Of a stretch of 64,000 nt of DNA, positions 644-53,629 are shown one piece after another. Where the stretch lies: assembly GCF_036588685.1 (NCBI RefSeq), contig NC_086373.1:27590001-27654000 (forward strand), written 5' to 3'. A program made the position numbers and the translations under genes. How positions within the stretch are numbered: position 1 is the first letter of the stretch; each line of letters opens with the position of its first letter. Origin of the DNA: Mytilus trossulus (Eukaryota). The notes under the pieces are model-generated. The model was given only the letters and a program-made list of their open reading frames with translations. It had not been told where the DNA came from and made no database searches.

Positions 644-775
644 AACCTGAGTGACTGGCAGGGTTTGTGTTGCACGAACCTGAGTGACTGGCAGGGTTTG
701 TGTTGCACGAACCTGAGTGACTGGCAGGGTTTGTGTTGCACGAACCTGAGTGACTGGCAGGGTTTGTGTTGCACG
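644..775. repeat. 33-bp minisatellite, 4 identical copies
   Basis: AACCTGAGTGACTGGCAGGGTTTGTGTTGCACG x4, read directly. Confidence 0.95.
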
Positions 776-934
776 ACTTTATATTTTTAGTGGTGTTCTG
801 TTTGATGAAAGTTGTTTGTTTGTTTGTTTGATTTGGTCAACTTTGATTTGGTTTTTTTTTCTTCGAATAATTATATGTTTTCTGCTGACAAATCAAGCTA
901 AGACATTAACAGGAAAACCTACAGACTAAAATAT

Positions 935-1492: not shown

Positions 1493-1783
1493 GTATTTCT
1501 ATGATACGTATCTGGTAACTGACTTTAAAAACGGCTAAACTACTTTTAAATTTGTTTACATTTATGAATAAAAATCCACGAATGAGTCACTATGGTATAG
1601 CGCACCCTCGAAAGTGTATTGAAATATGCCCATGTTTATATTTATTATTTAGTAAATATCTATGCTTGAAATCGTCGATATTGTTAATGATTGCTTGCAT
1701 TGCATATATGTTATTCTTCATTGAGTTACTACTGAATTTCATAATGTATGTGTACAAACAAGAAATCTGCCGATTTTCGTTTA

Positions 1784-3146
1784 CAGCCGATTTCTTTGAG
1801 TGGTGTAGGGAAAGGCAGAATCTTTGGTATGCTTGCTTGTTAGCGGAACCATGAAGTAATTATTATGATATATAAACTATCCTCCTTTAAGAGTAGCCTA
1901 GTCCGACAGATATAACTAACGTATCTTTCTGTAAATAGATATAGGAAGATGTGGTGTGAGTGTCAATGAGATAACTCTCCATCCAAATAACAATTTAAAA
2001 AGTAAACCATTATAGGTTAAAGTACGGCTTTCAACACGGAGCCTTGGCTCACACCGAACAACAAGCTATAAAGGGCCCCAAAATTACTAGTGTAAAATCA
2101 TTAAAACGGGATAACCAACGGTCTAATCTATATAAACAAAACGAGAAACACGTATATATTACATAAACAAACGACAACTACTGTACATCAGATTCCTGAC
2201 TCAAGACAGGTGCAAACATTTGCAGCGGGATTAAACGTTTAAATGGATCCAAACCTTCTCCCTTTTTCTGAAACAATAGCAAAACATCACAACATAGAAA
2301 AACACACGATAAAATATCAATTGGCAGACTTAACTCAATCAAAAAACGTATGATTACACAATGAACGAATAAATTTGATATCTGAATACAAATGCACAAT
2401 TAATTAAATATTAGAGACAAACATGATTCATGACCAAAAAGCTAACAAACAAATTCAAATAAAGCCATGGCAGGACACCACTGAGAAATATTTAACCCTT
2501 CGAAAATATTGATCAATATTCACTTTAGAAACAAACCGGTTTTAAAAAAAATAATTATAATCTTGAAGTTTATACAAATGTAGTCAGAAAAAGTGAAAAA
2601 TTGAAGACATTACAAATAATCAAAGCTGGTGTACAGACAAGATCCATATAAATAAAAAAATAATAAAAAATAACAAAAAAGCATTATAAACAGCATCAAC
2701 AGGTCGAATTAACATGAAAATACGATATGAGAGTACTGGCAGTTACTTACAGCTAGTTAAAAGCCCAAACCAATAAATAATAAAAAAAAAATCATGCATC
2801 AGAGACTAAAATCAACTAAAACACATCCCAGGGATTTAGTATTTTAACGTCATTAATAGACATGACTTGTGCAATGCCAACAATAAATGTATCGGTAGTG
2901 GGATAGTGAAGAGCGACTTCTATAGAAATAAAAATTAACGTGTCTGTGTCTCTATACATCTCGCCTTAAAAGATAATGAAATTTAGTTATGTTTAAATTT
3001 GCTAATGACAAAATCAATAGAAGTGCCTGTAAGACTACTTCGAAACAAGGGTAGTATACCTTACCTAGTAATGACTGCACGGTTCAGCTAACAAGTAAGC
3101 TAACCAAGGATTCTATCTTTCCATCAACACTCAATGAAATCGGCTG
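1784..3146. mobile_element. TA-flanked MITE with long TIRs (CAG...CTG termini, Tc1/mariner-like) carrying a nested insertion
   Basis: TA|CAGCCGATTTCTTTGAGTG ... CACTCAATGAAATCGGCTG|TA; an uninterrupted relative lies at 53110-53382. Confidence 0.75.
1935..2893. mobile_element. Dispersed repeat (GAAGATGTGG family) nested in the MITE
   Basis: Colinear similarity to 29875-30570 (GAGATAACTCTCC, CTATAAAGGGCCCC, CCTGACT..GACAGG, GACTTGTGCAATGCCAA). Confidence 0.7.
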
Positions 3147-3147
3147 T

Positions 3148-3415
3148 AAATAGTTATCAAAAGTACCAGGATTATAATTTTATACGCCAGACGCGCGTTT
3201 CGTCTACATAAGACTCATCAGTGACGCTCAGATCAAAATAGTTAAAAAGCCAAACAAATACAAAGTTGAAGAGCATTGAGGACCCAAAATTCCAAAAAGT
3301 TGTGCCAAATACGGCTAAGGTAATCTACTCCTGGGGTAAGAAAATCCTTAGTTTTTCGAATAATTCAAAGTTTTGTAAACAGAAAATTTATAAAAATGAC
3401 CATATAAATCATTCC
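3148..3415 (-). mobile_element. Hammerhead-carrying ~350-bp repeat (retrozyme / Penelope-type), partial monomer
   Basis: Near-identical to 3488-3740; contains an intact hammerhead core on the minus strand. Confidence 0.85.
3184..3227 (-). ncRNA. Type I hammerhead ribozyme (intact core)
   Basis: Minus strand reads GCGUCA-CUGAUGA-GUCU(UAUGU)AGAC-GAAA-CGCGCG-UC/UGGCGU. This gives both conserved boxes, a 4-bp stem II, a minimal palindromic stem III, a GUC cleavage triplet and stem I GCGUCA:UGGCGU. Confidence 0.9.
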
Positions 3416-3487
3416 ATATTCGTAGCATTGAAAAAACAAAAGTGTACACCATATTCTTTAATAATCGTTTTGTTGTCAATATCATAA

Positions 3488-3910
3488 TTAGTTATCAAAG
3501 GTACCAGGATTATAATTTAGTACGCCAGACGCGCGTTTCGTCTACATAAGACTCATCAGTGACGCTCATATCAAAATATTTGTAAAGCCAAACAAGTAAA
3601 AAGTTGAAGAGCGTTGAGGATCCAAAAGTCCAAAAAATTGTGCCAAATACGGCTAAGGTAAACTATGCCTGGGATAAGAAAATCCTTAGTTTTTCGGTAA
3701 TTCAAAGTTTTGTAAATAGGAATTTATAAAATGACCACATTTTTTATATCCATGTCAACACCGAAGTGTTGACTACTGGGTTGGTGATACCTTCGGGGAC
3801 GAAACGTCCACCAGCAGTGGCATCGATCCAGTGTTGTAAATAGTTATCAAAGGTACCAGGATTATAATTTAGTCTACAATAGACTCATCAGTGACGCTCA
3901 TATCAAAATA
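3488..3910 (-). mobile_element. Retrozyme-like repeat: full 352-bp monomer plus the start of a second head-to-tail copy
   Basis: TAGTTATCAAAGGTACCAGG at 3489 and again at 3841 (period 352 bp); in the second copy the GAAA/stem III part of the hammerhead is deleted. Confidence 0.85.
3522..3565 (-). ncRNA. Type I hammerhead ribozyme (intact core)
   Basis: Same 44-nt sequence as 3184-3227. Confidence 0.9.
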
Positions 3911-3982
3911 TTATAAATGATCAATATCTGACTGTTTTAATCTCATTGAAGGAAGTAGATACATGAATTAGTTATAAAAAAA

Positions 3983-5308
3983 TTATGAAAACAAAGGAAA
4001 ATCTAGTACAATTCCAAGAATATACAATAAATGTGCTACTACCATATAAAGTGCACTGAAAATGCCAAAAACAAAGTCAAGTTCTTCTCCGACATTCTTC
4101 CAGGTAATCTCCTCTTTAGAGGTAAAAGAGTTGATTTCCTCACTATTCGTTCCTCTATACTGATACTCTGATCCGTAGAGTTTTATTTTACTGATATCCA
4201 AACTATCATTGCTTTCATGTTTGTCTGTATTCTCGTCACCTTTACCTTTCGCCCCTTTCCTGCAGCAGCAACCGCATCTAAGTACACGACAAATCTTCAC
4301 AAATCTTTCTCCAAGATATGAAACGGGAATATTTTCATCACGCAGATAATAACGTAGACTTGTAATGACTAGTATAACAATTACGCCACTAAATGCGACG
4401 TCAGCAAAAAGAAGAATTGATAATGTTGGTATTTGTGGATCTGAGATTGCCGGAAGACCAGAGGCGGAAATTGTTAGAAATACGGCAATAGCCAACAATA
4501 CTGTAATAGAAAATCCAACGCGTTCTCCTGAATCTGCTGGTAGTAGAAAGACAAATGGATTAAGAATACACATAAGAACTATTGGCAGTATTAGGTTGAA
4601 AACAAAAAACATAGGCTTTCTCTTCAGTTTCATATGAAAATTTGCCACCTGTGGAACGGCAATTTTGGTCAGATTCGTTTCAACCAAATCCCATGTTTTA
4701 TGTGGGACAAACCATTCAGTTATAAAAGCTGTTGGCCATAATATTACCTCTTTTTCGTCATATGTTGATAAAACAAATGCTAAAGTACATGTTTGTGTAT
4801 CGAATGGATAATCTGTAACATCAGCTTGGCATGAAATATCGAATGCATCGCTTGGAAACCAATCAATTTGTCCAGTATAATGCACCCTCTTTACACTATC
4901 ATCTTTATATAATATTTTTTGTTCTCCATACGGATTTGACATTATAAAGGTTGGTTTCCAAAATAATTCTTCATTGAATGTAAAGGAAGAAGCGCCATAT
5001 TCGCTAGGATCCCATGACACAGTATTGTCTCTCCACTGAACTCCAAAAAATCCATTTAAACTTAATTTTCCGGCAACTTCGTCGAATTCCTGAATATAAG
5101 TCATATGAAAATAAAAGTAAATTATAACAGGTTCGTCCCATTTGTTGACAGGTCTCACCTCTTTGTTTCTTCCATTTGTCACATTTTGTATAAGTTCCTG
5201 TATAGGTTTGTATTCCTCCTTTTTCGATTTATCTTCTTTCTCTTCATCAGCATTGGTATTTAGTAGAAATGATAATATTATAATGATAGAGCACCAATAA
5301 GAAAACAT
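3983..5308 (-). CDS. Intronless Cys-loop ligand-gated ion channel, divergent non-alpha nAChR-like subunit (441 aa)
   Basis: Signal peptide; VRPV, FDEV and WKP motifs; Cys-loop CQADVTDYPFDTQTC; KRKP-M1; PADSGER-M2; four TM segments; no vicinal cysteines. Confidence 0.93.
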   Translation of the reverse strand: MFSYWCSIIIILSFLLNTNADEEKEDKSKKEEYKPIQELIQNVTNGRNKEVRPVNKWDEPVIIYFYFHMTYIQEFDEVAGKLSLNGFFGVQWRDNTVSWDPSEYGASSFTFNEELFWKPTFIMSNPYGEQKILYKDDSVKRVHYTGQIDWFPSDAFDISCQADVTDYPFDTQTCTLAFVLSTYDEKEVILWPTAFITEWFVPHKTWDLVETNLTKIAVPQVANFHMKLKRKPMFFVFNLILPIVLMCILNPFVFLLPADSGERVGFSITVLLAIAVFLTISASGLPAISDPQIPTLSILLFADVAFSGVIVILVITSLRYYLRDENIPVSYLGERFVKICRVLRCGCCCRKGAKGKGDENTDKHESNDSLDISKIKLYGSEYQYRGTNSEEINSFTSKEEITWKNVGEELDFVFGIFSALYMVVAHLLYILGIVLDFPLFS

Positions 5309-7014: not shown

Positions 7015-7235
7015 TAAATAAACTCATCAGAGACACCAGGTTTAAAAATTTATTTATACGTCAGTATTGTTTTCAGTAAATTTATAATTATGAACATATC
7101 AATAATAATTCAAAACAATACAGAGTGCTGACTACTGGGTTTGTGATACCCTCGGGGAAATAAATCTCCACCAGCTGTGTTATCGACCCAGTTGTTTTAA
7201 ATAAACTCATCATAGATACCAGGATTAAAAATTGA
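7015..7235 (-). mobile_element. Decayed retrozyme-like repeat (hammerhead deleted)
   Basis: AATAAACTCATCA..ACCAGG start occurs twice; GACTACTGGG..CCACCAGC block present. Confidence 0.75.
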
Positions 7236-7257
7236 TATAAAAGGACAGACAATTTTA

Positions 7258-8559: not shown

Positions 8560-9134
8560 CACCCCCATCTCATATGTAAGAATTTGTGTAGGTCTGACGA
8601 TCCAGTTTTCCGTGAAGACAGTCAGAGTACGACTAAATGGCAAACTAAATTTTTGACAGTTTAAATTTCCATTCTTTGAAATCAATTTTACGATTTTACA
8701 GAGTATGTTTTCTATAGAAAAGCTAAAAATCTAAATAGAAAGAGAGTATCGATGTATTTCTTCCAAATAATTAACTTTCATAAGTTTTAACTGCATTATC
8801 AGGAGATAACACTTTAATTTTAATAATAAATTTATTACACGAGAGATGGCCTAGTTCTGCCTGATGTTGTAATGAAATATTTTAATGATATCGTATTAGT
8901 GTAAGTGCGACTGCTAAGCTGACTGTATTTTTTTTCGTTTTTCAAAATTAAAAAAGTGTTAAAAACTATTTGAAAAAATATAATTTTCAATTGATTTTCA
9001 CAATGTCAGAGATGTATTCTATTGATTATGTTAAATTATAATTTCAAATTGTGAAATATCAAACAGTTGCATTCCAGGTTCATTCCGTTGCCTGTAAGAT
9101 TATTCATAATTACTTGATTGTGGAAGGATTAAAG

Positions 9135-10337
9135 ATGCTTGTTTTTATCATTTGTTTTTCTACTGTCAGTTTTTCTTTATGTCAAAACTCAAGTGATTTC
9201 AAAGCTCTGAAAAAGGAGCTATTCTTTTCAAAGGAATATGATAAAGATTCAAAACCTGTACAAGATTATAAGAGTACCATCTACGTAAATGTTGAATTGA
9301 CATTAAACTCACTTATAACACTCGATGAAGTTCAACAAAGATTAACAACTATTGGATACCTTCATATTAGCTGGTATGATGAGTTCCTAACATGGGACCG
9401 AACACAATATGGAGACTTAGATTATATATACCTTCCTCAGTCAAGCATCTGGAAACCGGATATAACTTTACAAGATAGTTATACAGAGATGGAAGAGCTA
9501 GGTTCCGATTTGATTTTGGCGACAATCAAACATGATGGTAGTGTCAGTTGGACACCATTTCAAGTGTTTAATTCATACTGCCCAGTCTCAATGACATTCT
9601 TTCCATTTGACAGGCAAACTTGTGAATTTGTTTTCGGAGCTTGGAGTATGCAAATGAACGATATTTCCCTTCTCATAACAAATGTATCAGGAATAGCATT
9701 AGAGCGCTCTATAAAGGAAAATACAATTTGGACGGTTGTTTCCACCTCAGTAAAAGCAACACAGTACCATGAAGAATCTAGAGTGATATTTTCTATCACA
9801 TTACAGAGGAAACCGTTGTATGTAATGATGCATTTAGTCCTCCCGTTAGTCCTATTAACACTTTTGAATCTGTTTACATTTGCCATACCTGCTGATAGTG
9901 GTGAACGCATGGGTTACACGGTAACCGTTTGGTTGTCCTTCGGTGTATTCCTTACTCTTGTTGGACAGTCTCTTCCAGAGAGTTCGGAATCCATATCTTT
10001 TATGGATATATTTATAGTGATGCAGCTTTTCCAAAGCACACTGGTAGTGTTACTTTCAGCCGTTTTATCCAGATTAATCGCTCGAAATGGACAGACATTT
10101 ATTTCGTCATGTCTCCTAAAACGCATTGTCACCTATAAGAGAGGAAAGAGTGTGAACACAGCATCGGAGATAAAGAACGATGAAAAGGAAACTCAAATTT
10201 ACATTACCTGGAAAGAGTATGTGTCCACTATTGATTTCTGCGTGTTTTGGTGTTTGCTGTCAATATGCATCCTACTGATAACTGCACTTTCATTCTACAC
10301 TGTTTACAAAGCTGAATATACGCTTTCAGGGGAATGA
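9135..10337 (+). CDS. Intronless non-alpha nAChR-like subunit (400 aa), paralog A
   Basis: First ATG at 9135 opens a signal peptide (the ORF-track start 9051 is GTG); WKPDITL; Cys-loop CPVSMTFFPFDRQTC; FGAW; PADSGER; four TMs. Confidence 0.93.
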   Translation: MLVFIICFSTVSFSLCQNSSDFKALKKELFFSKEYDKDSKPVQDYKSTIYVNVELTLNSLITLDEVQQRLTTIGYLHISWYDEFLTWDRTQYGDLDYIYLPQSSIWKPDITLQDSYTEMEELGSDLILATIKHDGSVSWTPFQVFNSYCPVSMTFFPFDRQTCEFVFGAWSMQMNDISLLITNVSGIALERSIKENTIWTVVSTSVKATQYHEESRVIFSITLQRKPLYVMMHLVLPLVLLTLLNLFTFAIPADSGERMGYTVTVWLSFGVFLTLVGQSLPESSESISFMDIFIVMQLFQSTLVVLLSAVLSRLIARNGQTFISSCLLKRIVTYKRGKSVNTASEIKNDEKETQIYITWKEYVSTIDFCVFWCLLSICILLITALSFYTVYKAEYTLSGE

Positions 10338-11960: not shown

Positions 11961-12619
11961 ATAATAAACTTATCATAGATACCAGTATTAAAATTTTAGA
12001 CGCGCGTTTCGTCTACAAAAGACTCACCAGTGACGCTTGAATCAAAAACAGTTTAAAAGGCCAAACAAAGTACGAATTTGAAGAGCATTGAAGACCAAAA
12101 ATTCCTCAAAGTTTTGCCAAACACAGCAAAGGTAATCTATTCTTGAGGTAGAAAAGCCTTAGTATTTAAAAATCAAGTTTTGTTAACAGTTAACTCATTA
12201 TTATGAACATATTAATGATAACTCAAGTCAACACAGAAGTGCTGACTACTGGGCTGGTCTTACCCTCGAGGAAGTAAATCTCCACCAGCAGTGGCATCAA
12301 CCCAGTGGTTGTAAATAAACTCATCATATATACCATGAGTAACATTTTATATTTACGCCAGACACATGTTTCGTCTACAAAACAAATAAATGTTTAAAAG
12401 GCCAAATAAAGTATGAAGTTGAAAAGCATTGAAGACCAAAAAATCTTAAAAGATTTGCCAAATACAGCTGAGGTAGAAAAAAAAAAGAATTTTAATAATA
12501 CAAAGTTTTGTTTACAGTTAACTTATTATTATGAAAATATCAATGATAGCTTTAGTCAACACAGAAGTGGTGACTACTGGGCTAGCGATACCCTCGAGGA
12601 ACTAAATCTCCACCAGCAA
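11961..12619 (-). mobile_element. Retrozyme-like repeat, about two head-to-tail decayed monomers
   Basis: Unit starts near 11963 and 12314; hammerheads mutated (CUGGUGA with stem I deleted; second lacks CUGAUGA); empty site in copy 2 near 27865. Confidence 0.85.
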
Positions 12620-13749: not shown

Positions 13750-13955
13750 AAATATACTCATTATAGATACCAGGATTAAAATTTTATATTTAGGCCAGAC
13801 GCGCGTTTTGTCTACAAAAGACGCTGCAGTGACGCTCGAATAAAAAAAAGTTAAAAAGGCCAAATAAAGAGCGAAGTTAACGAAAGAGGACCAAACATTC
13901 CTAAATGTTTGCCAATGCACCTAAGATAATCTATTCCTGAGGTGGAAAACCCTTA
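13750..13955 (-). mobile_element. Decayed retrozyme-like repeat
   Basis: Family sequence; hammerhead boxes mutated (CUGCAGC, GAAA lost). Confidence 0.8.
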
Positions 13956-14461: not shown

Positions 14462-15285
14462 AATTAAAATTATAGCGAACATTTATTGTTGCAATGTCAG
14501 GGAAAACTGTATATATCTGAATATCTGCCATGTTTTGATTGATAATTTGCATATTTTTTAAAGTCTGGCATGCACTTCAAATCAGCAAATATTTTTTCAG
14601 ATACACAACACGCTTTTGACATCAAGGTAGCACGATTGGTTGTTACGTTTTAGCTTTCTTGGATTGTGTTTTTTGTATATTTTCAAGGACATGCATTTTT
14701 TTATCTGCTTGTTTGATTCGTAAAGTTGGTGCTTGTTTTTTTTATCTTGTTTCATGTTTCAGTGTACTTTATTTTTTTCTAAATGTGAAGCGCATAGATT
14801 TTTTTGTTATTATATAATGCACTCTATAATAGTGCATATATTCATTTATTTATAATGCGTGCGAGATTAAATTTATAAAATCAATTTACGCATCACAGAA
14901 AATAGAAGCATGATGAATTATTCCTGACAATAAATTCTATAATTATAAAAAGGGATTCAAAATTCTTAAATTTAATTCACAGGAGATGTCTTAGTTATGT
15001 CGGATAGGAATTTTTAATGACGCATTTTAATGAAATCGTGTCCGTGTAAGTGAGAATGCTAAACCGCATCTATTCTTTTGTGTTTTAAAATGAAAAAGTG
15101 AGCAAAAACTGTATCTATATTTTTTTTAAAGCTTGAATTGATTTTTACAAAGTCAGAAAAGTATTCTATTGATCCTTTAAAATTACAATTTTAAAGTGTG
15201 AACTACCAAAGAGTTGCATTCCTGGTTTATTTCGTTGCCTGCAAGATTATTCATAATCAATTTAATTATTGTGGAAGGATTAAAG

Positions 15286-16488
15286 ATGATTGTTTTTATC
15301 ATTTGGATTTCTACTGTAAGTTTTTCTTTATGCCAAAACTCAAGTGATGTCAAAGCTTTGAAAAGAGAGCTATTCGTAACTAAGGAATATGATAAGGATT
15401 CCAAACCTGTACAAGATTATGAGAGTACCATCTACGTAAATGTTGAATTGACATTAAACTCACTAATAACACTCGATGAAGTTCAACAAAGATTAACAAC
15501 TATTGGATACCTTAATATAAGTTGGCATGATGAGTTTCTAACATGGGACCGAAAACAATATGGAGACTTGGACTATATATACCTTCCTCAGTCAGAGATC
15601 TGGAAACCGGATATAACCTTACAAGATAGTTATACAGGGATGGAAGAGCTTGGTTCTGATTTGATATTGGCGACAATCAGACATGATGGTAGTGTCAATT
15701 GGACACCGTTTCAAGTATTTAATTCATACTGTCCAGTCTCAATGACGTTCTTTCCATTTGACAGGCAAACTTGCGAATTTGTTTTCGGAGCTTGGAGTAT
15801 GCGTCTGAAAGATGTTTCCCTTCTAATAAAAAATGTGTCAGAAATAGCATTGGAGCGCTCAATAAAAGAAAATACAATTTGGACGGTTGTTTCAACCTCA
15901 GCAAGTACAGCACAGTACCATGAGGAATCTCTAGTGATATTTTCTATCACATTACAGAGGAAACCGTTGTATGTTATGCTGAATATGGTTCTCCCATTAG
16001 TCCTTTTATCACTTTTGAATCTGTTTACATTTGCCATACCTGCTGATTGTGGTGAACGCATGGGTTACACGGTAACCGTTTGGTTGTCCTTCGGTGTGTT
16101 CCTTACTATAATTGGACAGTCTTTGCCAGAGAGTTCGGAATCCATATCTTTTATGGATATATTTATAGTGATGCAGCTATTCCAAAGTACACTGGTGGTG
16201 TTGCTCTCAACCATTGTATCCCGATGTTGTGCTCGAAATGGACAGACATTTATTTCGTCATGTCTCCTGAAACGCATTGTAACCTATAAGAGAGGAAAGA
16301 GTGTGAACACATCATCGGAGATTACGAACGATGCAAAGAAAACTCAAATTTACATTACATGGAAAGAGTATGTGTCCACTATTGATTTCTGTTTGTTTTG
16401 GTGTTTGCTGTCAATATGCATACTTTCAATTACCGCACTTTCATTTTACACCGTTTACAAAGCTGAGTACACGCTTTCAGGAAAATGA
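15286..16488 (+). CDS. Intronless non-alpha nAChR-like subunit (400 aa), paralog B
   Basis: ATG at 15286 (the ORF-track start 15214 is TTG); same motifs and length as paralog A; about 45 aa differences counted by eye. Confidence 0.93.
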   Translation: MIVFIIWISTVSFSLCQNSSDVKALKRELFVTKEYDKDSKPVQDYESTIYVNVELTLNSLITLDEVQQRLTTIGYLNISWHDEFLTWDRKQYGDLDYIYLPQSEIWKPDITLQDSYTGMEELGSDLILATIRHDGSVNWTPFQVFNSYCPVSMTFFPFDRQTCEFVFGAWSMRLKDVSLLIKNVSEIALERSIKENTIWTVVSTSASTAQYHEESLVIFSITLQRKPLYVMLNMVLPLVLLSLLNLFTFAIPADCGERMGYTVTVWLSFGVFLTIIGQSLPESSESISFMDIFIVMQLFQSTLVVLLSTIVSRCCARNGQTFISSCLLKRIVTYKRGKSVNTSSEITNDAKKTQIYITWKEYVSTIDFCLFWCLLSICILSITALSFYTVYKAEYTLSGK

Positions 16489-19178: not shown

Positions 19179-19380
19179 ACAACAAAAGTCACCAATGAAA
19201 TGTTGAAGTCGATTGGTTAAAAACCAGTAAGATCATGGAAGTATATTTATATTGACAAAGGTTAAATCGAGTATCCCGGGCATAAATACGATTTTTTATT
19301 CACCATTTAAGCTGTTAAAAATGTACAAAACCCTAACTTGTATCGTGATGGCTAAAGACTCATCGGTACTCACTAACATA

Positions 19381-19561
19381 TTACCTTAGATGTATTTGGC
19401 AAAACGTTTAGGAATTTTGGTCCTTAATGCTCTTCAACTTCTTACTGTATTTGGCTTTTTTAAATTTTTGGATTCGAGCGTCACTGATGCGTCTTTTGTA
19501 GACGAAACGCGAGTCTGGCCTATATATACAAAATTAAGTCCTGGTATCTATGATGAGTTTA
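19381..19561 (+). mobile_element. 5'-truncated retrozyme-like insertion inside the first satellite monomer
   Basis: Splits AACATA|TGTCA relative to copy 1; ends GGTATCTATGATGAGTTTAT. Confidence 0.85.
19478..19521 (+). ncRNA. Degenerate type I hammerhead ribozyme
   Basis: GCGUCA-CUGAUGC-GUCU(UUUGU)AGAC-GAAA-CGCGAG-UC/UGGCCU; the last A of CUGAUGA is mutated, so probably impaired. Confidence 0.65.
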
Positions 19562-51913: not shown

Positions 51914-53109
51914 TCTTTCTGAATCAACCGGTTTATTGTGTTATTGGCTAAAACACCAACACATATTCAGTTTCTATAATAGTACATATACAATGTAACA
52001 CGGAACTGTGGACTTTTGGTTTAACCCCTTGGTCTATATGTATACATGCATGAATGTTCACCTGATCCACGGTTTATTTGTGGAGTTTGTTTTGTTTGCT
52101 CAATAAATCATTTGTTTGTGAAAATATTTTTTTTATTAATATTATATTTTTTTTATTATTGTTTAGCAAAGGCAATAATAATCATAGTAATCTATTTGAA
52201 AACAGTATTATTCCTTCTTCTCTGCAATATATTTGTTAGAAATACATTTTGTAATCTATTGTATTTATTTTCTTATTAATGTTCCATTTAAATGTGTAGC
52301 TTTCACTAGATATTAGAGAATTTAGAAAAGTGGCAATTTAAGCGACTTTTCCTCATTTTTTGTGAGTTTCGTACTTTGTGTTTGAGTTTCGTGCAGCATA
52401 CAGTTTGAGCTTTTTGAAGGATGGTTATAGTTTTTCTAAGAATTATTCCATTAAGAACTTTTACAGATTTTGTTTAAACACAGCCGTCGTATTTTGTAAA
52501 AAAAAAGTATTACAAAATATTCAATTAACGGAAACTATTTATTTTCTATCAGAATAAATTCGAATTGGATATCAAACTGGACGAAGAAACTCATAATTTT
52601 CTATAGATGTTGGAATGAACTAAACTGAAAACTATCCTTTTTAAATATTTGTGCTTTTAAAAAAAAGGTTATAGGAAACGCATGTAAACATTATTAAAAT
52701 TATAGCTTATTTAAAGAAGAATCAAAGTACATTCTAGTTAAGCGTTTTTATTTTTTACGGCTGAATTTAGGATGTAAAGACAGAAAGAAACTAAGATGCT
52801 GAAAAAAATTTCTTGCCGTAAATGGCTCTTTAACATAAATAGAGTCTTTTCTTTTTATTATCTGAAATACTGCCGTTTGGTAAAGCAAATAGAACTAAAA
52901 AAGAATTACTGTACAGTAACAATTTGACTGACTTTGTGATAGTTCGTCTTTTTGTTGACCAAATTGTTTTAGCATAGATTTTTGTTAATGATGTTAAATT
53001 TTATTACATCAAACTTTTAATATCTGTGATATATTTTATTGACAAAATAAACTTTTAAATATTAACGATGTTTTTTTTCCATGTTCATTCAATTTCCATG
53101 TCTCATTTA

Positions 53110-53382
53110 CAGCGGATATCATTGAGTGTGTAGTGAAAGGTAATATCTTTGGTTAACTTGCTTCGCTGAACCGTGAAGTCAGTATTACGTCAGGTATACC
53201 GTACCCTCCTTTCGAAGTACGATGTAGCATAGTCCAACAAATAGATCGATTGGTTTTCTGTCGGACCAGTCGATTCTTAAAGTAGGATTTATTACCTAAC
53301 CTAACGATGACTTCACGGTTCAGCTAACAAGCAAGCTAACCAGACATGTTAGCTTTGGCTACACACTCAATGGAATCCGCTG
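53110..53382. mobile_element. 273-bp TA-flanked MITE with ~90-bp imperfect TIRs
   Basis: TA|CAGCGGATATCATTGAGTGTGTAG ... CTACACACTCAATGGAATCCGCTG|TA. Confidence 0.85.
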
Positions 53383-53629
53383 TAATATTTAGGTTGACTA
53401 AGTAAGAGAAGGTTGAGTTTAATTTTCACCAAAAACAAATTACGGCTTGTCGTGTTGGTCCTTTATCTTTTCTAGGCAATCCTATGCCCTATACTACGCA
53501 ATTTTTTAATTTTCGCATTGATTGATGTGGGTAAGAACAGCATTTCAACTTAAACGTTACATCAAAGTAAATTGTATAGAACAAAAGAAAAAGAAAAAAA
53601 ATCACTGATATTATGCGGGACAGCATTAT

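What the first reader, a model, noticed from the sequence alone, without database searches (positions are those of the whole stretch)
3148..3910. Hammerhead-ribozyme retroelement (retrozyme-like): tandem 352-bp units with two intact type I hammerheads
Seen: on the minus strand, 3184-3227 and 3522-3565 both read GCGUCA CUGAUGA GUCU-UAUGU-AGAC GAAA CGCGCG UC/UGGCGU. This is a complete hammerhead core with stem I, stem II and a tiny self-complementary stem III (ACGCGCGU). The repeat unit is 352 bp, head-to-tail. Established: minimal type I hammerheads with palindromic stem III occur in Penelope-like elements and in animal retrozymes, including in mussels; tandem copies self-cleave (often as dimers) into monomers that circularise. 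Inference: transcription across the two intact sites would release a ~338-nt RNA (cuts at 3528/3527 and 3190/3189) that could form a circRNA. The class is known, but this locus would be invisible to ORF-based annotation.
Basis: partly seen in the sequence, partly recalled or inferred. Interest (0 to 1): 0.9.

Follow-up and report, generated by a model that had tools for sequence, protein, structure and literature searches.

The report
Two adjacent mussel retrozyme insertions
The two self-cleaving hammerhead ribozymes are real, but they belong to two separate, side-by-side copies of an already published mussel "retrozyme" mobile element, and public RNA data show no transcript from this particular locus.

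Summary
Two identical 44-nt type I hammerheads lie on the minus strand at 3227-3184 and 3565-3522. They score 33.0 bits against Rfam RF00163, 1 bit under its cut-off, with E 4e-6. They match the self-cleaving Mytilus galloprovincialis Mg353 retrozyme ribozyme (Cervera & de la Peña 2020) at all but one loop base.

The locus is not a tandem array.
- Insertion A (3407-3145) is a young, 5'-truncated copy, 99.5-100% identical to the genome's 355-bp master unit.
- Insertion B (3917-3485) is an older 1.2-unit copy, about 90% identical. Its upstream hammerhead has lost about 20 nt.
- Between them lie 77 bp of single-copy, AT-rich host DNA.

The predicted 338-nt RNA would therefore be a chimera of B's tail, host DNA and A.

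In three RNA-seq runs the family is deeply covered. The main spacer bin (3410-3450), the flanks and B's private bases get almost no reads, and reads leaving A or B continue into canonical sequence. So the family is active but this locus looks silent.

In 13 of 14 other insertions the 3' end lies 41-50 nt (mostly 41-45) past the cleavage site, and 5' ends vary. This fits target-primed reverse transcription of circular or multimeric RNA. Other first-stage notes on this genome report the same family elsewhere. It is a known class, of low novelty.

The parts
3145..3407 (-). Insertion A: a young, 5'-truncated retrozyme copy. It covers canonical unit positions 138-355 plus the 45-nt tail (positions 1-45) and has one intact hammerhead.
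   Evidence: BLAST against the 355-nt canonical unit gives 99.5% over 218 nt and 100% over 45 nt. Dozens of genomic copies are 100% identical over this part.
3184..3227 (-). Intact type I hammerhead 1, in insertion A. Predicted cleavage is after GUC, between 3190 and 3189.
   Evidence: Rfam RF00163 at 33.0 bits, E 4e-6, over the full model 1-45. The core pattern matches exactly. It is identical to the published self-cleaving Mg353 hammerhead except for one loop-2 base.
3408..3484 (.). A 77-nt AT-rich spacer (27% GC). It is host DNA, not retrozyme sequence.
   Evidence: It does not align to the canonical unit. It is the only match in the 1.3-Gb assembly. RNA depth is zero in bin 3410-3450 in all runs.
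3485..3917 (-). Insertion B: an older retrozyme copy of about 1.2 units. It covers canonical 297-347 (with a broken hammerhead), 10-355 and a 43-nt tail.
   Evidence: It is 90.5% identical over 346 nt. About a third of its differences are shared with other roughly 90% copies, which marks an older subfamily; the rest are private. RNA reads almost never carry its private bases (table 3).
3522..3565 (-). Intact type I hammerhead 2, in insertion B. Predicted cleavage is between 3528 and 3527.
   Evidence: Rfam RF00163 at 33.0 bits, E 4e-6, with an exact core pattern.
3868..3903 (-). Dead hammerhead 3, at the 5' end of insertion B. Helix I 5' strand, CUGAUGA and helix II are present. About 20 nt are deleted: GAAA, helix III, the cleavage site and the helix I 3' strand.
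   Evidence: Sequence, alignment to canonical units, and only a spurious 21.5-bit Hammerhead_3 hit.
3741..3836 (-). The GC-rich hairpin domain of the family (canonical positions about 46-137). It is present in B and absent from the 338-nt interval between the intact ribozymes.
   Evidence: Alignment. The fold of the canonical unit shows stable hairpins at positions 48-126, and this domain is 60% GC.
3032..3150 (.). An older, unrelated interspersed repeat (R) that abuts the 3' end of A. Its terminus TGTAAA (3145-3150) overlaps the retrozyme tail by 6 nt, forming a microhomology junction.
   Evidence: Paralogs at 1780-1899, 53105-53219 and 53293-53385 are 77-80% identical. All end in GCTGTAA(A) and then diverge.
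3983..5308 (-). Context: an intronless 441-aa Cys-loop receptor ORF on the same strand. Its stop codon lies 66 nt upstream of insertion B.
   Evidence: ORF list. Pfam Neur_chan_LBD at 3.7e-32 and Neur_chan_memb at 1e-11. No RNA reads cover its 3' end in X21, X23 or X24.
3936..3941 (-). Context: an ATTAAA candidate polyadenylation signal, between the receptor stop codon and insertion B.
   Evidence: Read from the sequence. Its function is inferred only.

Best explanation
The locus holds two independent, same-orientation insertions of the known mussel non-LTR retrozyme family, whose canonical unit is 355 nt.

Family mechanism (established in the literature):
- Tandem copies are transcribed.
- The type I hammerhead cuts after GUC.
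- The monomer, with a 5'-OH and a 2',3'-cyclic phosphate, is circularised, most likely by an RtcB-type tRNA ligase.
- The RNA is reverse-transcribed and re-inserted by a non-LTR machinery, with Penelope-like elements the favoured candidate.

What I infer for this locus:
- Insertion B arrived first and has decayed. It belongs to an older subfamily, carries roughly 5% private changes, and its upstream ribozyme is deleted.
- Insertion A arrived very recently, 77 bp downstream, as a 5'-truncated single-ribozyme copy.
- Each insertion alone has only one working ribozyme, so neither can release a monomer on its own.
- The 338-nt interval between the two ribozymes is an accidental chimera, and it is not detectably transcribed.

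The fixed 3' end, about 41-45 nt past the cleavage site, together with variable 5' ends, suggests that cDNA synthesis starts at an internal site (around UAUUUACA) of a circular or multimeric template. Priming on nicked target DNA with short microhomology would fit this. That last step is inference.
For: Ribozymes:
- Searches show the sequence, the Rfam match and the pattern statistics.
- One search shows the published self-cleaving Mg353 motif differs by one loop-2 base.

Family:
- At least 178 genomic matches, many 100% identical.
- 355-bp-period arrays holding 5-7 exact-pattern hammerheads each; BLAST shows up to about 9 units in L014.
- The unit is 39% GC and has no long ORF.
- The published description of M. 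galloprovincialis retrozymes of 350-390 bp, about 5000 hammerheads and abundant circRNA.

Two insertions:
- Alignment and BLAST to the canonical unit.
- The spacer is single-copy.
- B ends at canonical position 43. Of 14 other insertions, 13 end at positions 41-50 (mostly 41-45) and one at 35, while 5' ends range from position 1 to 295.
- A is 99.5-100% identical to the master and B is 90.5%.
- A candidate 8-bp duplication, GATATTGA, flanks B.
- A 6-nt overlap joins A's tail to the terminus of an older repeat.

No expression of this locus:
- Depth reaches about 2450 on A and 890 on B, but is 0 in spacer bin 3410-3450, at 3000-3122 and at 3943-4200.
- Joints 3407>3743 (135 and 582 reads) and 3834>3145 (78 and 370 reads) restore canonical continuity.
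- Loose ends at 3145 and 3407 read the canonical GC-rich domain.
- In run X21, B's own base is read in 0 of 160 reads at 3613, 2 of 109 at 3628 and 0 of 38 at 3662. Runs X23 and X24 give at most 2-4 such reads per position.
- Reads are strand-biased, up to 10:1 first mate on +, which in most stranded libraries means RNA of the hammerhead-sense strand.
Against: - Only three RNA runs were laid, and only 6-18% of each was read. A tissue-specific or rare transcript would be missed.
- The individuals sequenced may lack insertion A or differ at B's diagnostic positions. The best DNA runs hold only about 0.5 of the sampled words.
- One contig in run X1 (1275 nt, depth 13) runs from the receptor ORF to 3883, inside the start of B. 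X1's RNA status is only a guess. If it is RNA, some read-through into B may occur in a related species.
- Target-site duplications are not statistically supported across 16 insertions (p = 0.11).
- The link to Penelope-like elements was not tested here.
Confidence: 0.84

Rival explanations
1. The locus is a head-to-tail retrozyme array. Transcription across the two intact hammerheads releases a 338-nt RNA that is circularised into a circRNA.
For: Both ribozymes are intact, in the same orientation and 338 nt apart. Two copies can pair into a stable double hammerhead, -29.5 kcal/mol against 2 x -9.2. A receptor gene on the same strand ends 66 nt upstream and could supply read-through transcription. 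The X1 contig reaches 3883.
Against: - The interval is a chimera with 77 nt of unique host DNA and lacks the GC-rich domain.
- It folds no better than shuffled sequence, z = +1.5.
- No RNA reads cover the main spacer bin, the flanks or the receptor ORF end in three runs, while the family is covered hundreds- to thousands-fold.
- An ATTAAA signal lies upstream of B.
Confidence: 0.07
2. A single composite insertion. One reverse-transcription event copied a young retrozyme RNA, jumped to an unrelated 77-nt RNA, and then jumped to the 3' end of a second retrozyme RNA.
For: The two parts have the same orientation and lie close together. B's tail ends exactly at the family's usual 3' terminus, as expected for an end-to-end template jump.
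Against: - A is 99.5-100% identical to the master and B is 90.5%, with private changes that expressed RNA almost never carries.
- B's upstream ribozyme carries a deletion and a loop change absent from B's other ribozyme, so it decayed in place.
- A candidate 8-bp duplication flanks B alone, with one copy inside the spacer.
- Retrozyme fragments cluster generally in this genome, so adjacency needs no special event.
Confidence: 0.05
3. An exapted 3'-UTR ribozyme. The sense-strand hammerheads downstream of the receptor stop codon cleave the receptor mRNA and regulate it.
For: The hammerheads are in sense orientation, 66 nt from the stop codon. The X1 contig links the ORF end to the start of B.
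Against: - The first ribozyme downstream of the stop codon is dead. The first intact one lies about 420 nt further on.
- A candidate polyadenylation signal precedes the insertion.
- Other retrozyme fragments near the two paralogous receptor ORFs sit in either orientation and at kilobase distances.
- No expression data cover the ORF in the raw-read runs.
Confidence: 0.04

Closest known systems
Mytilus galloprovincialis non-LTR retrozyme (Cervera & de la Peña, Nucleic Acids Res 2020, PMC7229834; genomic clone Mg353)
   Same: - The hammerhead is identical except for one loop-2 base.
- The cleavage context is the same (GCGCGUC then UGGCGUA).
- Long identical blocks of the GC-rich domain are shared. 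I compared by eye.
- The unit size is 355 nt, against the published 350-390 nt.
- GC content is low, and the copies are dispersed and tandem.
- RNA is abundant.
   Different: The master unit here is a sequence variant of Mg353. I judge it roughly 80-85% similar outside the shared blocks, from reading the two outputs rather than from a computed alignment. This locus is not an array: it is two partial insertions, it cannot release a canonical monomer, and it shows no RNA.
Penelope-like elements (PLEs) with hammerheads in pseudo-LTRs (Cervera & de la Peña 2014; Craig et al. 2021, PMC8557442)
   Same: - A type I hammerhead lies near the 3' end.
- Insertions are partial tandems with 5' truncation.
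- A tail lies beyond the repeat: 30-40 bp in PLEs and 41-45 nt here.
- The elements are dispersed.
   Different: There is no RT or GIY-YIG ORF at this locus. PLE hammerheads are described as 'minimal' variants, whereas the retrozyme motif has a 2-bp helix III capped by a tetraloop.
Newt/salamander satellite 2 and axolotl retrozymes (Epstein & Gall 1987; PMC7229834)
   Same: - Units of about 330-350 bp carry a type I hammerhead.
- Helix III is short and palindromic.
- Cleavage is favoured in dimeric constructs.
[quoted passage not shown]
   Different: The unit sequence is unrelated and the hosts are vertebrates. Those ribozymes cleave poorly as monomers. The mussel motif is reported to cleave as a monomer at about 0.1 per min.

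Membership tests
Hammerhead ribozyme, type I (Rfam RF00163) | Conserved catalytic core: CUGAUGA, GAAA and a cleavable UH site (GUC) | tested here: met
   Both sites have the exact core. All core columns match in the cmscan alignment.
Hammerhead ribozyme, type I (Rfam RF00163) | Three helices around the core, with helix I open-ended (type I topology) | tested here: met
   Helix I has 6 bp including G-U pairs, helix II has 4 bp, and helix III is ACGCGCGU (alignment). The monomer hammerhead fold is -5.7 kcal/mol. The dimer minimum-energy structure is the double hammerhead at -29.5 kcal/mol.
Hammerhead ribozyme, type I (Rfam RF00163) | Covariance-model score at or above Rfam's curated cut-off of 34 bits | tested here: inconclusive
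   The score is 33.0 bits with E 4e-6, 1 bit below the cut-off, so nothing is listed at gathering. This is a database threshold, not a biological property.
Hammerhead ribozyme, type I (Rfam RF00163) | Site-specific self-cleavage | not testable with these tools
   Self-cleavage at about 0.1 per min is published for the Mg353 motif, which differs by one loop base.
Metazoan non-LTR retrozyme (mussel family) | Short (170-400 bp) head-to-tail units, each with a type I hammerhead | tested here: met
   This holds for the family: arrays with a 355-bp period in L013, L014 and L015. At this locus there are only partial copies, with B about 1.2 units and A about 0.74 units.
Metazoan non-LTR retrozyme (mussel family) | Sequence homology to the published M. 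galloprovincialis retrozyme | tested here: met
   (supplement text) compared: 43 of 44 hammerhead bases are identical, and there are shared blocks of 28 nt or more in the GC-rich domain.
Metazoan non-LTR retrozyme (mussel family) | Non-coding, low GC, no LTR, PBS or PPT | tested here: met
   GC is 39%. The longest stop-free stretch in a trimer is 98 aa. Insertion ends are a variable 5' truncation and a short tail, not LTRs. PBS and PPT motifs were not searched for specifically.
Metazoan non-LTR retrozyme (mussel family) | Abundant RNA of ribozyme polarity; circular form | tested here: inconclusive
   Family RNA is abundant and strand-biased, and read ends do not pile up at the cleavage sites. 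Short reads cannot tell circles from uncleaved multimers. This particular locus shows no RNA.
Penelope-like element (autonomous) | ORF encoding a reverse transcriptase, with or without a GIY-YIG endonuclease | tested here: not met
   There is no ORF of 80 aa or more within 3000-3982. The only neighbouring ORF is a Cys-loop receptor.

The most novel reading that the evidence does not exclude
Nearly all sampled insertions of this family end about 41-45 nt downstream of the hammerhead cleavage site, and their 5' ends vary. One young insertion (A) joins its target through a 6-nt overlap (TGTAAA) with the retrozyme tail. If this is general, the reverse-transcription template is not the ribozyme-cleaved linear monomer, whose 3' end would be at GUC. 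It would instead be a ligated circle or a multimer, primed at one internal site by microhomology with the nicked target. That would be direct genomic evidence for circRNA-templated, rolling-circle target-primed reverse transcription of animal retrozymes.
Probability: 0.35. Interest if true: 0.55.

Novelty: already known. Interest (0 to 1): 0.22.

Why it matters
The family matters. It is a ribozyme-based route to abundant circRNAs in animals, and a mobile element that ORF-based annotation cannot see. It was already characterised experimentally in mussels in 2020.

This locus adds no new class. It is a useful caution: two intact ribozymes at a retrozyme-like spacing do not make a retrozyme monomer. 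It also gives a small, clean example of nested or adjacent insertion with a fixed 3' terminus.

The 3'-terminus regularity, if confirmed genome-wide and compared with Penelope-like element ends, could help settle how animal retrozymes are mobilised.

Tried and rejected
- **Rfam at gathering thresholds, whole window:** no hit. The hammerheads appear only in the E-value scan.
- **Tandem Repeats Finder:** no array at the locus.
- **Minimum-energy folding of the 44-mer and a 76-mer:** neither recovers the hammerhead fold, and both are no better than shuffles. Only the two-strand cofold does.
- **Opposite-polarity relic hammerhead at 3772-3818 (another first-stage note):** no plus-strand hammerhead match at E up to 10. 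By eye the segment lacks a helix I. Not supported.
- **Target-site duplications across 16 insertions:** 7 of 16 have a flush match of 5 nt or more, against 27% in mismatched controls, p = 0.11. Inconclusive.
- **Empty-site reconstruction for insertion A from paralogs of the neighbouring repeat R:** the three paralogs diverge from each other right after GCTGTAA(A). The weak similarity between paralog 2 and the spacer was matched or exceeded by 9 of 300 shuffles, so I treat it as chance. Rejected.
- **Segmental duplication as the source of the seven retrozyme fragments near the receptor genes:** the receptor ORF region has no nucleotide-level paralog in the window. Rejected.
- **Penelope-like partner:** PF01541 finds at least 149 GIY-YIG matches, in open frames up to 1056-1060 aa.
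- **Selection on B's intact ribozyme:** B has 0 of 44 changes there despite about 10% divergence overall. This is explained by subfamily-level differences, and with about 5% private divergence P(0) is about 0.1. I make no claim.

Full report
**1. The observation**

The minus strand at 3227-3184 and at 3565-3522 reads GCGUCA-CUGAUGA-GUCU-UAUGU-AGAC-GAAA-CGCGCG-UC-UGGCGU exactly. Rfam's Hammerhead_1 model (RF00163) aligns to both sites over its full length at 33.0 bits, E 4e-6 in a 1.1-kb scan. That is 1 bit below the curated cut-off of 34, so the whole-window scan at gathering thresholds lists nothing.

A pattern for the core plus helices II and III occurs four times in the window. Two matches are exact, at this locus. 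One has 1 mismatch, at 11999-12030 (-), with core CUGGUGA. One has 2 mismatches, at 19484-19515 (+). Shuffles give 0.00 expected. The predicted cuts at 3190/3189 and 3528/3527 and the 338-nt interval are correct.

A third copy, at about 3903-3868, has lost about 20 nt. The loss covers GAAA, helix III, the cleavage site and the 3' strand of helix I.

**2. What the family is**

The assembly is 1.30 Gb in 541 contigs. Contigs C1 to C14 measure 60-113 Mb where I saw lengths, and the window is 33% GC. From my own knowledge, 14 large contigs fit a Mytilus-like karyotype of n = 14.

A search of the assembly with the 338-nt interval gave at least 178 matches. Dozens are 100% identical over query positions 121-338, and many are spaced 355 bp apart. 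Three arrays I fetched hold 5-7 exact-pattern hammerheads at a strict 355-bp period. BLAST shows up to about 9 units in L014. I use one 355-nt unit (L013:900-1254, minus) as the canonical unit. It is 39% GC, has a 60%-GC hairpin domain at about positions 46-126, and is non-coding.

Cervera & de la Peña 2020 (PMC7229834) describe exactly this in M. galloprovincialis:
- about 5000 type I hammerheads, in two sequence families that differ mainly in loops 1 and 2;
- repeats of 350-390 bp;
- self-cleavage at about 0.1 per min;
- circRNAs of up to about 1% of total RNA;
- circularisation in vitro by RtcB rather than by the ribozyme.

Their cloned genomic unit Mg353, printed in the supplement, carries the same hammerhead apart from one loop-2 base (UUUUGU there, UUAUGU here). 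It has the same cleavage context. It also shares long identical blocks of the GC-rich domain with the canonical unit.

**3. Anatomy of the locus**

BLAST and alignment against the canonical unit resolve the region into three parts, read on the minus strand.
- **Insertion B, 3917-3485.** It covers canonical 297-347 (the broken hammerhead), then 10-355 at 90.5% identity, then a 43-nt tail (positions 1-43).
- **Spacer, 3484-3408.** These 77 nt are 27% GC and align to nothing in the family. The spacer is the only match in the whole assembly.
- **Insertion A, 3407-3145.** It covers canonical 138-355 at 99.5% identity and a 45-nt tail at 100%.

So the two intact ribozymes belong to different insertions. 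The 338-nt interval consists of B's tail, host DNA and a 5'-truncated A. It lacks the GC-rich domain, and its fold is no better than shuffled sequence (z = +1.5; compare).

About a third of B's differences from the master are shared with other roughly 90% copies (L028). That marks an older subfamily. The rest are private.

Three further observations bear on independence.
- B is flanked by a candidate 8-bp duplication, GATATTGA, and one copy lies inside the spacer.
- A's 3' end overlaps by 6 nt (TGTAAA, 3145-3150) the terminus of an older unrelated repeat at 3032-3150. The three paralogs of that repeat in the window all end in GCTGTAA(A).
- Across 14 other insertions, 13 end at canonical positions 41-50 (mostly 41-45) and one ends at 35. 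Their 5' ends range from position 1 to 295.

This is the signature of target-primed reverse transcription with 5' truncation. It matches the partial-tandem-plus-tail architecture reported for Penelope-like elements (PMC8557442). I found this regularity, before reading the first-stage note s1-821054, which reports the same thing.

**4. Is this locus expressed?**

I laid window 3000-4200 against two stranded RNA runs (X21, X23), one random-primed RNA run (X24) and one contig set (X1).

- **Depth.** It reaches about 560 (X21) and 2450 (X23) on A, and about 410-890 on B. It is zero in spacer bin 3410-3450, at 3000-3122 and at 3943-4200, which includes the end of the receptor ORF.
- **Joints.** Reads that leave A at 3407 jump to 3743 in B (135 and 582 reads). 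Reads that leave B at 3834 jump back to 3145 (78 and 370 reads). These joints simply restore canonical positions 137-138 and 45-46.
- **Loose ends.** Those at 3145 and 3407 spell the canonical GC-rich domain.
- **B's private positions.** Nearly every read carries the family base instead. In X21, B's own base is read in 0 of 160 reads at 3613, 2 of 109 at 3628 and 0 of 38 at 3662. X23 and X24 give at most 2-4 such reads per position.

So the RNA comes from other copies. The family is strongly expressed, but this locus is not detectably expressed in these samples.

First mates lie on the + strand up to 10 times more often than on the - strand. In most stranded libraries that means RNA of the minus, ribozyme-sense strand. 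I had no control gene to confirm the library type.

No pile-up of read ends appears at the cleavage sites. Most molecules therefore run across the site, as expected for ligated circles or uncleaved multimers. Short reads cannot separate those two.

Heterogeneous loose ends at 3485-3490 show that many family reads run out of insertion termini into diverse flanks, so dispersed copies are also co-transcribed with their surroundings. Loose ends at 3181 and 3229 reveal a second expressed family that shares only the ribozyme and resembles Mg353.

The X1 contig (1275 nt, depth 13) spans the receptor ORF end down to 3883. X1's RNA status is a guess. If it is RNA, the receptor message may reach the start of B in a related species.

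**5. Mechanism**

Shown here:
- intact ribozyme cores;
- family arrays and dispersed near-identical copies;
- a near-fixed 3' terminus and variable 5' truncation;
- abundant strand-biased RNA;
- silence of this locus in the runs examined.

Taken from the literature: self-cleavage, circularisation by a tRNA ligase, and the hypothesis of mobilisation by Penelope-like elements. A 2026 preprint on vertebrates supports that hypothesis (10.64898/2026.07.22.740005).

Inferred:
- B inserted first and A later.
- Reverse transcription starts at an internal site about 40-45 nt past the cleavage site on a circular or multimeric template, helped by microhomology with the target.
- Two hammerheads can pair through the palindromic helix III. 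The cofold minimum-energy structure is the double hammerhead, at -29.5 kcal/mol against 2 x -9.2. The published mussel motif also cleaves as a monomer.

**6. Context and clustering**

A 441-aa intronless Cys-loop receptor ORF (3983-5308, minus) ends 66 nt upstream of B, on the same strand. An ATTAAA signal lies between them, at 3941-3936.

The window holds five more degraded family fragments within 16 kb and none in the other 44 kb. They are not explained by segmental duplication.

An arbitrary 200-kb sample of the genome holds 11 fragments, confined to 4 of 20 regions. By a rough hand calculation this departs from a Poisson spread at about p = 0.007. Clustering therefore looks like a general habit of the family, and the adjacency of A and B needs no special mechanism.

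**7. Verdict**

That class was already published for mussels. Several first-stage notes on other parts of this genome report the same family.

The tandem-array description and the predicted 338-nt circRNA are not supported.

Novelty is low. The only mildly new point is the 3'-terminus regularity and the microhomology junction, which bear on how retrozymes are mobilised.

Noticed in passing
window 644-776: A perfect tandem repeat of a 33-bp unit, 4.0 copies at 100% identity.
   Followed up: no
window 3032-3150; paralogs at 1780-1899 (-), 53105-53219 (-), 53293-53385 (+): An unrelated interspersed repeat family, 77-80% identical between copies. Its copies all end in GCTGTAA(A). Insertion A abuts this terminus with a 6-nt overlap.
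   Followed up: partly
window 7063-7237 (-), 11999-12351 (-), 12394-12618 (-), 13798-13955 (-), 19380-19515 (+): Five more degraded fragments of the retrozyme family, 73-85% identical to the canonical unit. The hammerhead at 11999-12030 has a core change (CUGGUGA). The one at 19484-19515 has two changes. Both have the Mg353-type loop 2.
   Followed up: partly
window 3181 and 3229 (loose ends in RNA reads): About 100 reads per run match only the hammerhead and diverge on both sides into a consistent other sequence. This is a second expressed retrozyme family that shares the ribozyme, and its flanks resemble the published Mg353.
   Followed up: no
window 3485-3490 (loose ends in RNA reads): Hundreds of reads leave the retrozyme tail at the usual insertion terminus and run into heterogeneous sequences (agreement 0.42-0.53). 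Many dispersed insertions are therefore transcribed together with their flanks, not only as circles.
   Followed up: no
L017-L036 (20 arbitrary 10-kb samples of G000): Retrozyme fragments are frequent, about 1 per 18 kb, and clustered: 11 fragments fall in 4 of 20 regions, with three regions holding 3-4 each.
   Followed up: partly
window 9051-10337 (+) and 15214-16488 (+): Two further intronless ORFs of 428 and 424 aa near the 441-aa Cys-loop receptor ORF. They have no nucleotide-level similarity to it. I did not run them against Pfam.
   Followed up: no
G000 genome-wide: At least 149 GIY-YIG (PF01541) matches, many in open frames of 900-1060 aa and often in nearby pairs. They are probably intact Penelope-like or Naiad elements, which are candidate autonomous partners of the retrozymes. 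None of these loci could be read.
   Followed up: no
output: All 178 genome matches to the 338-nt query were reported on the minus strand of their contigs. My own BLAST of arbitrary samples finds copies on both strands. The tool's first look probably saw only one orientation, so its counts are lower bounds.
   Followed up: no
window 3883-4200 (run X1): A 1275-nt contig at depth 13 spans the receptor ORF's 3' end and reaches 34 nt into insertion B. It has an 8-nt insertion after 3923. This is possible evidence that the receptor message extends into the retrozyme in a related species, but the run's RNA status is only a guess.
   Followed up: no
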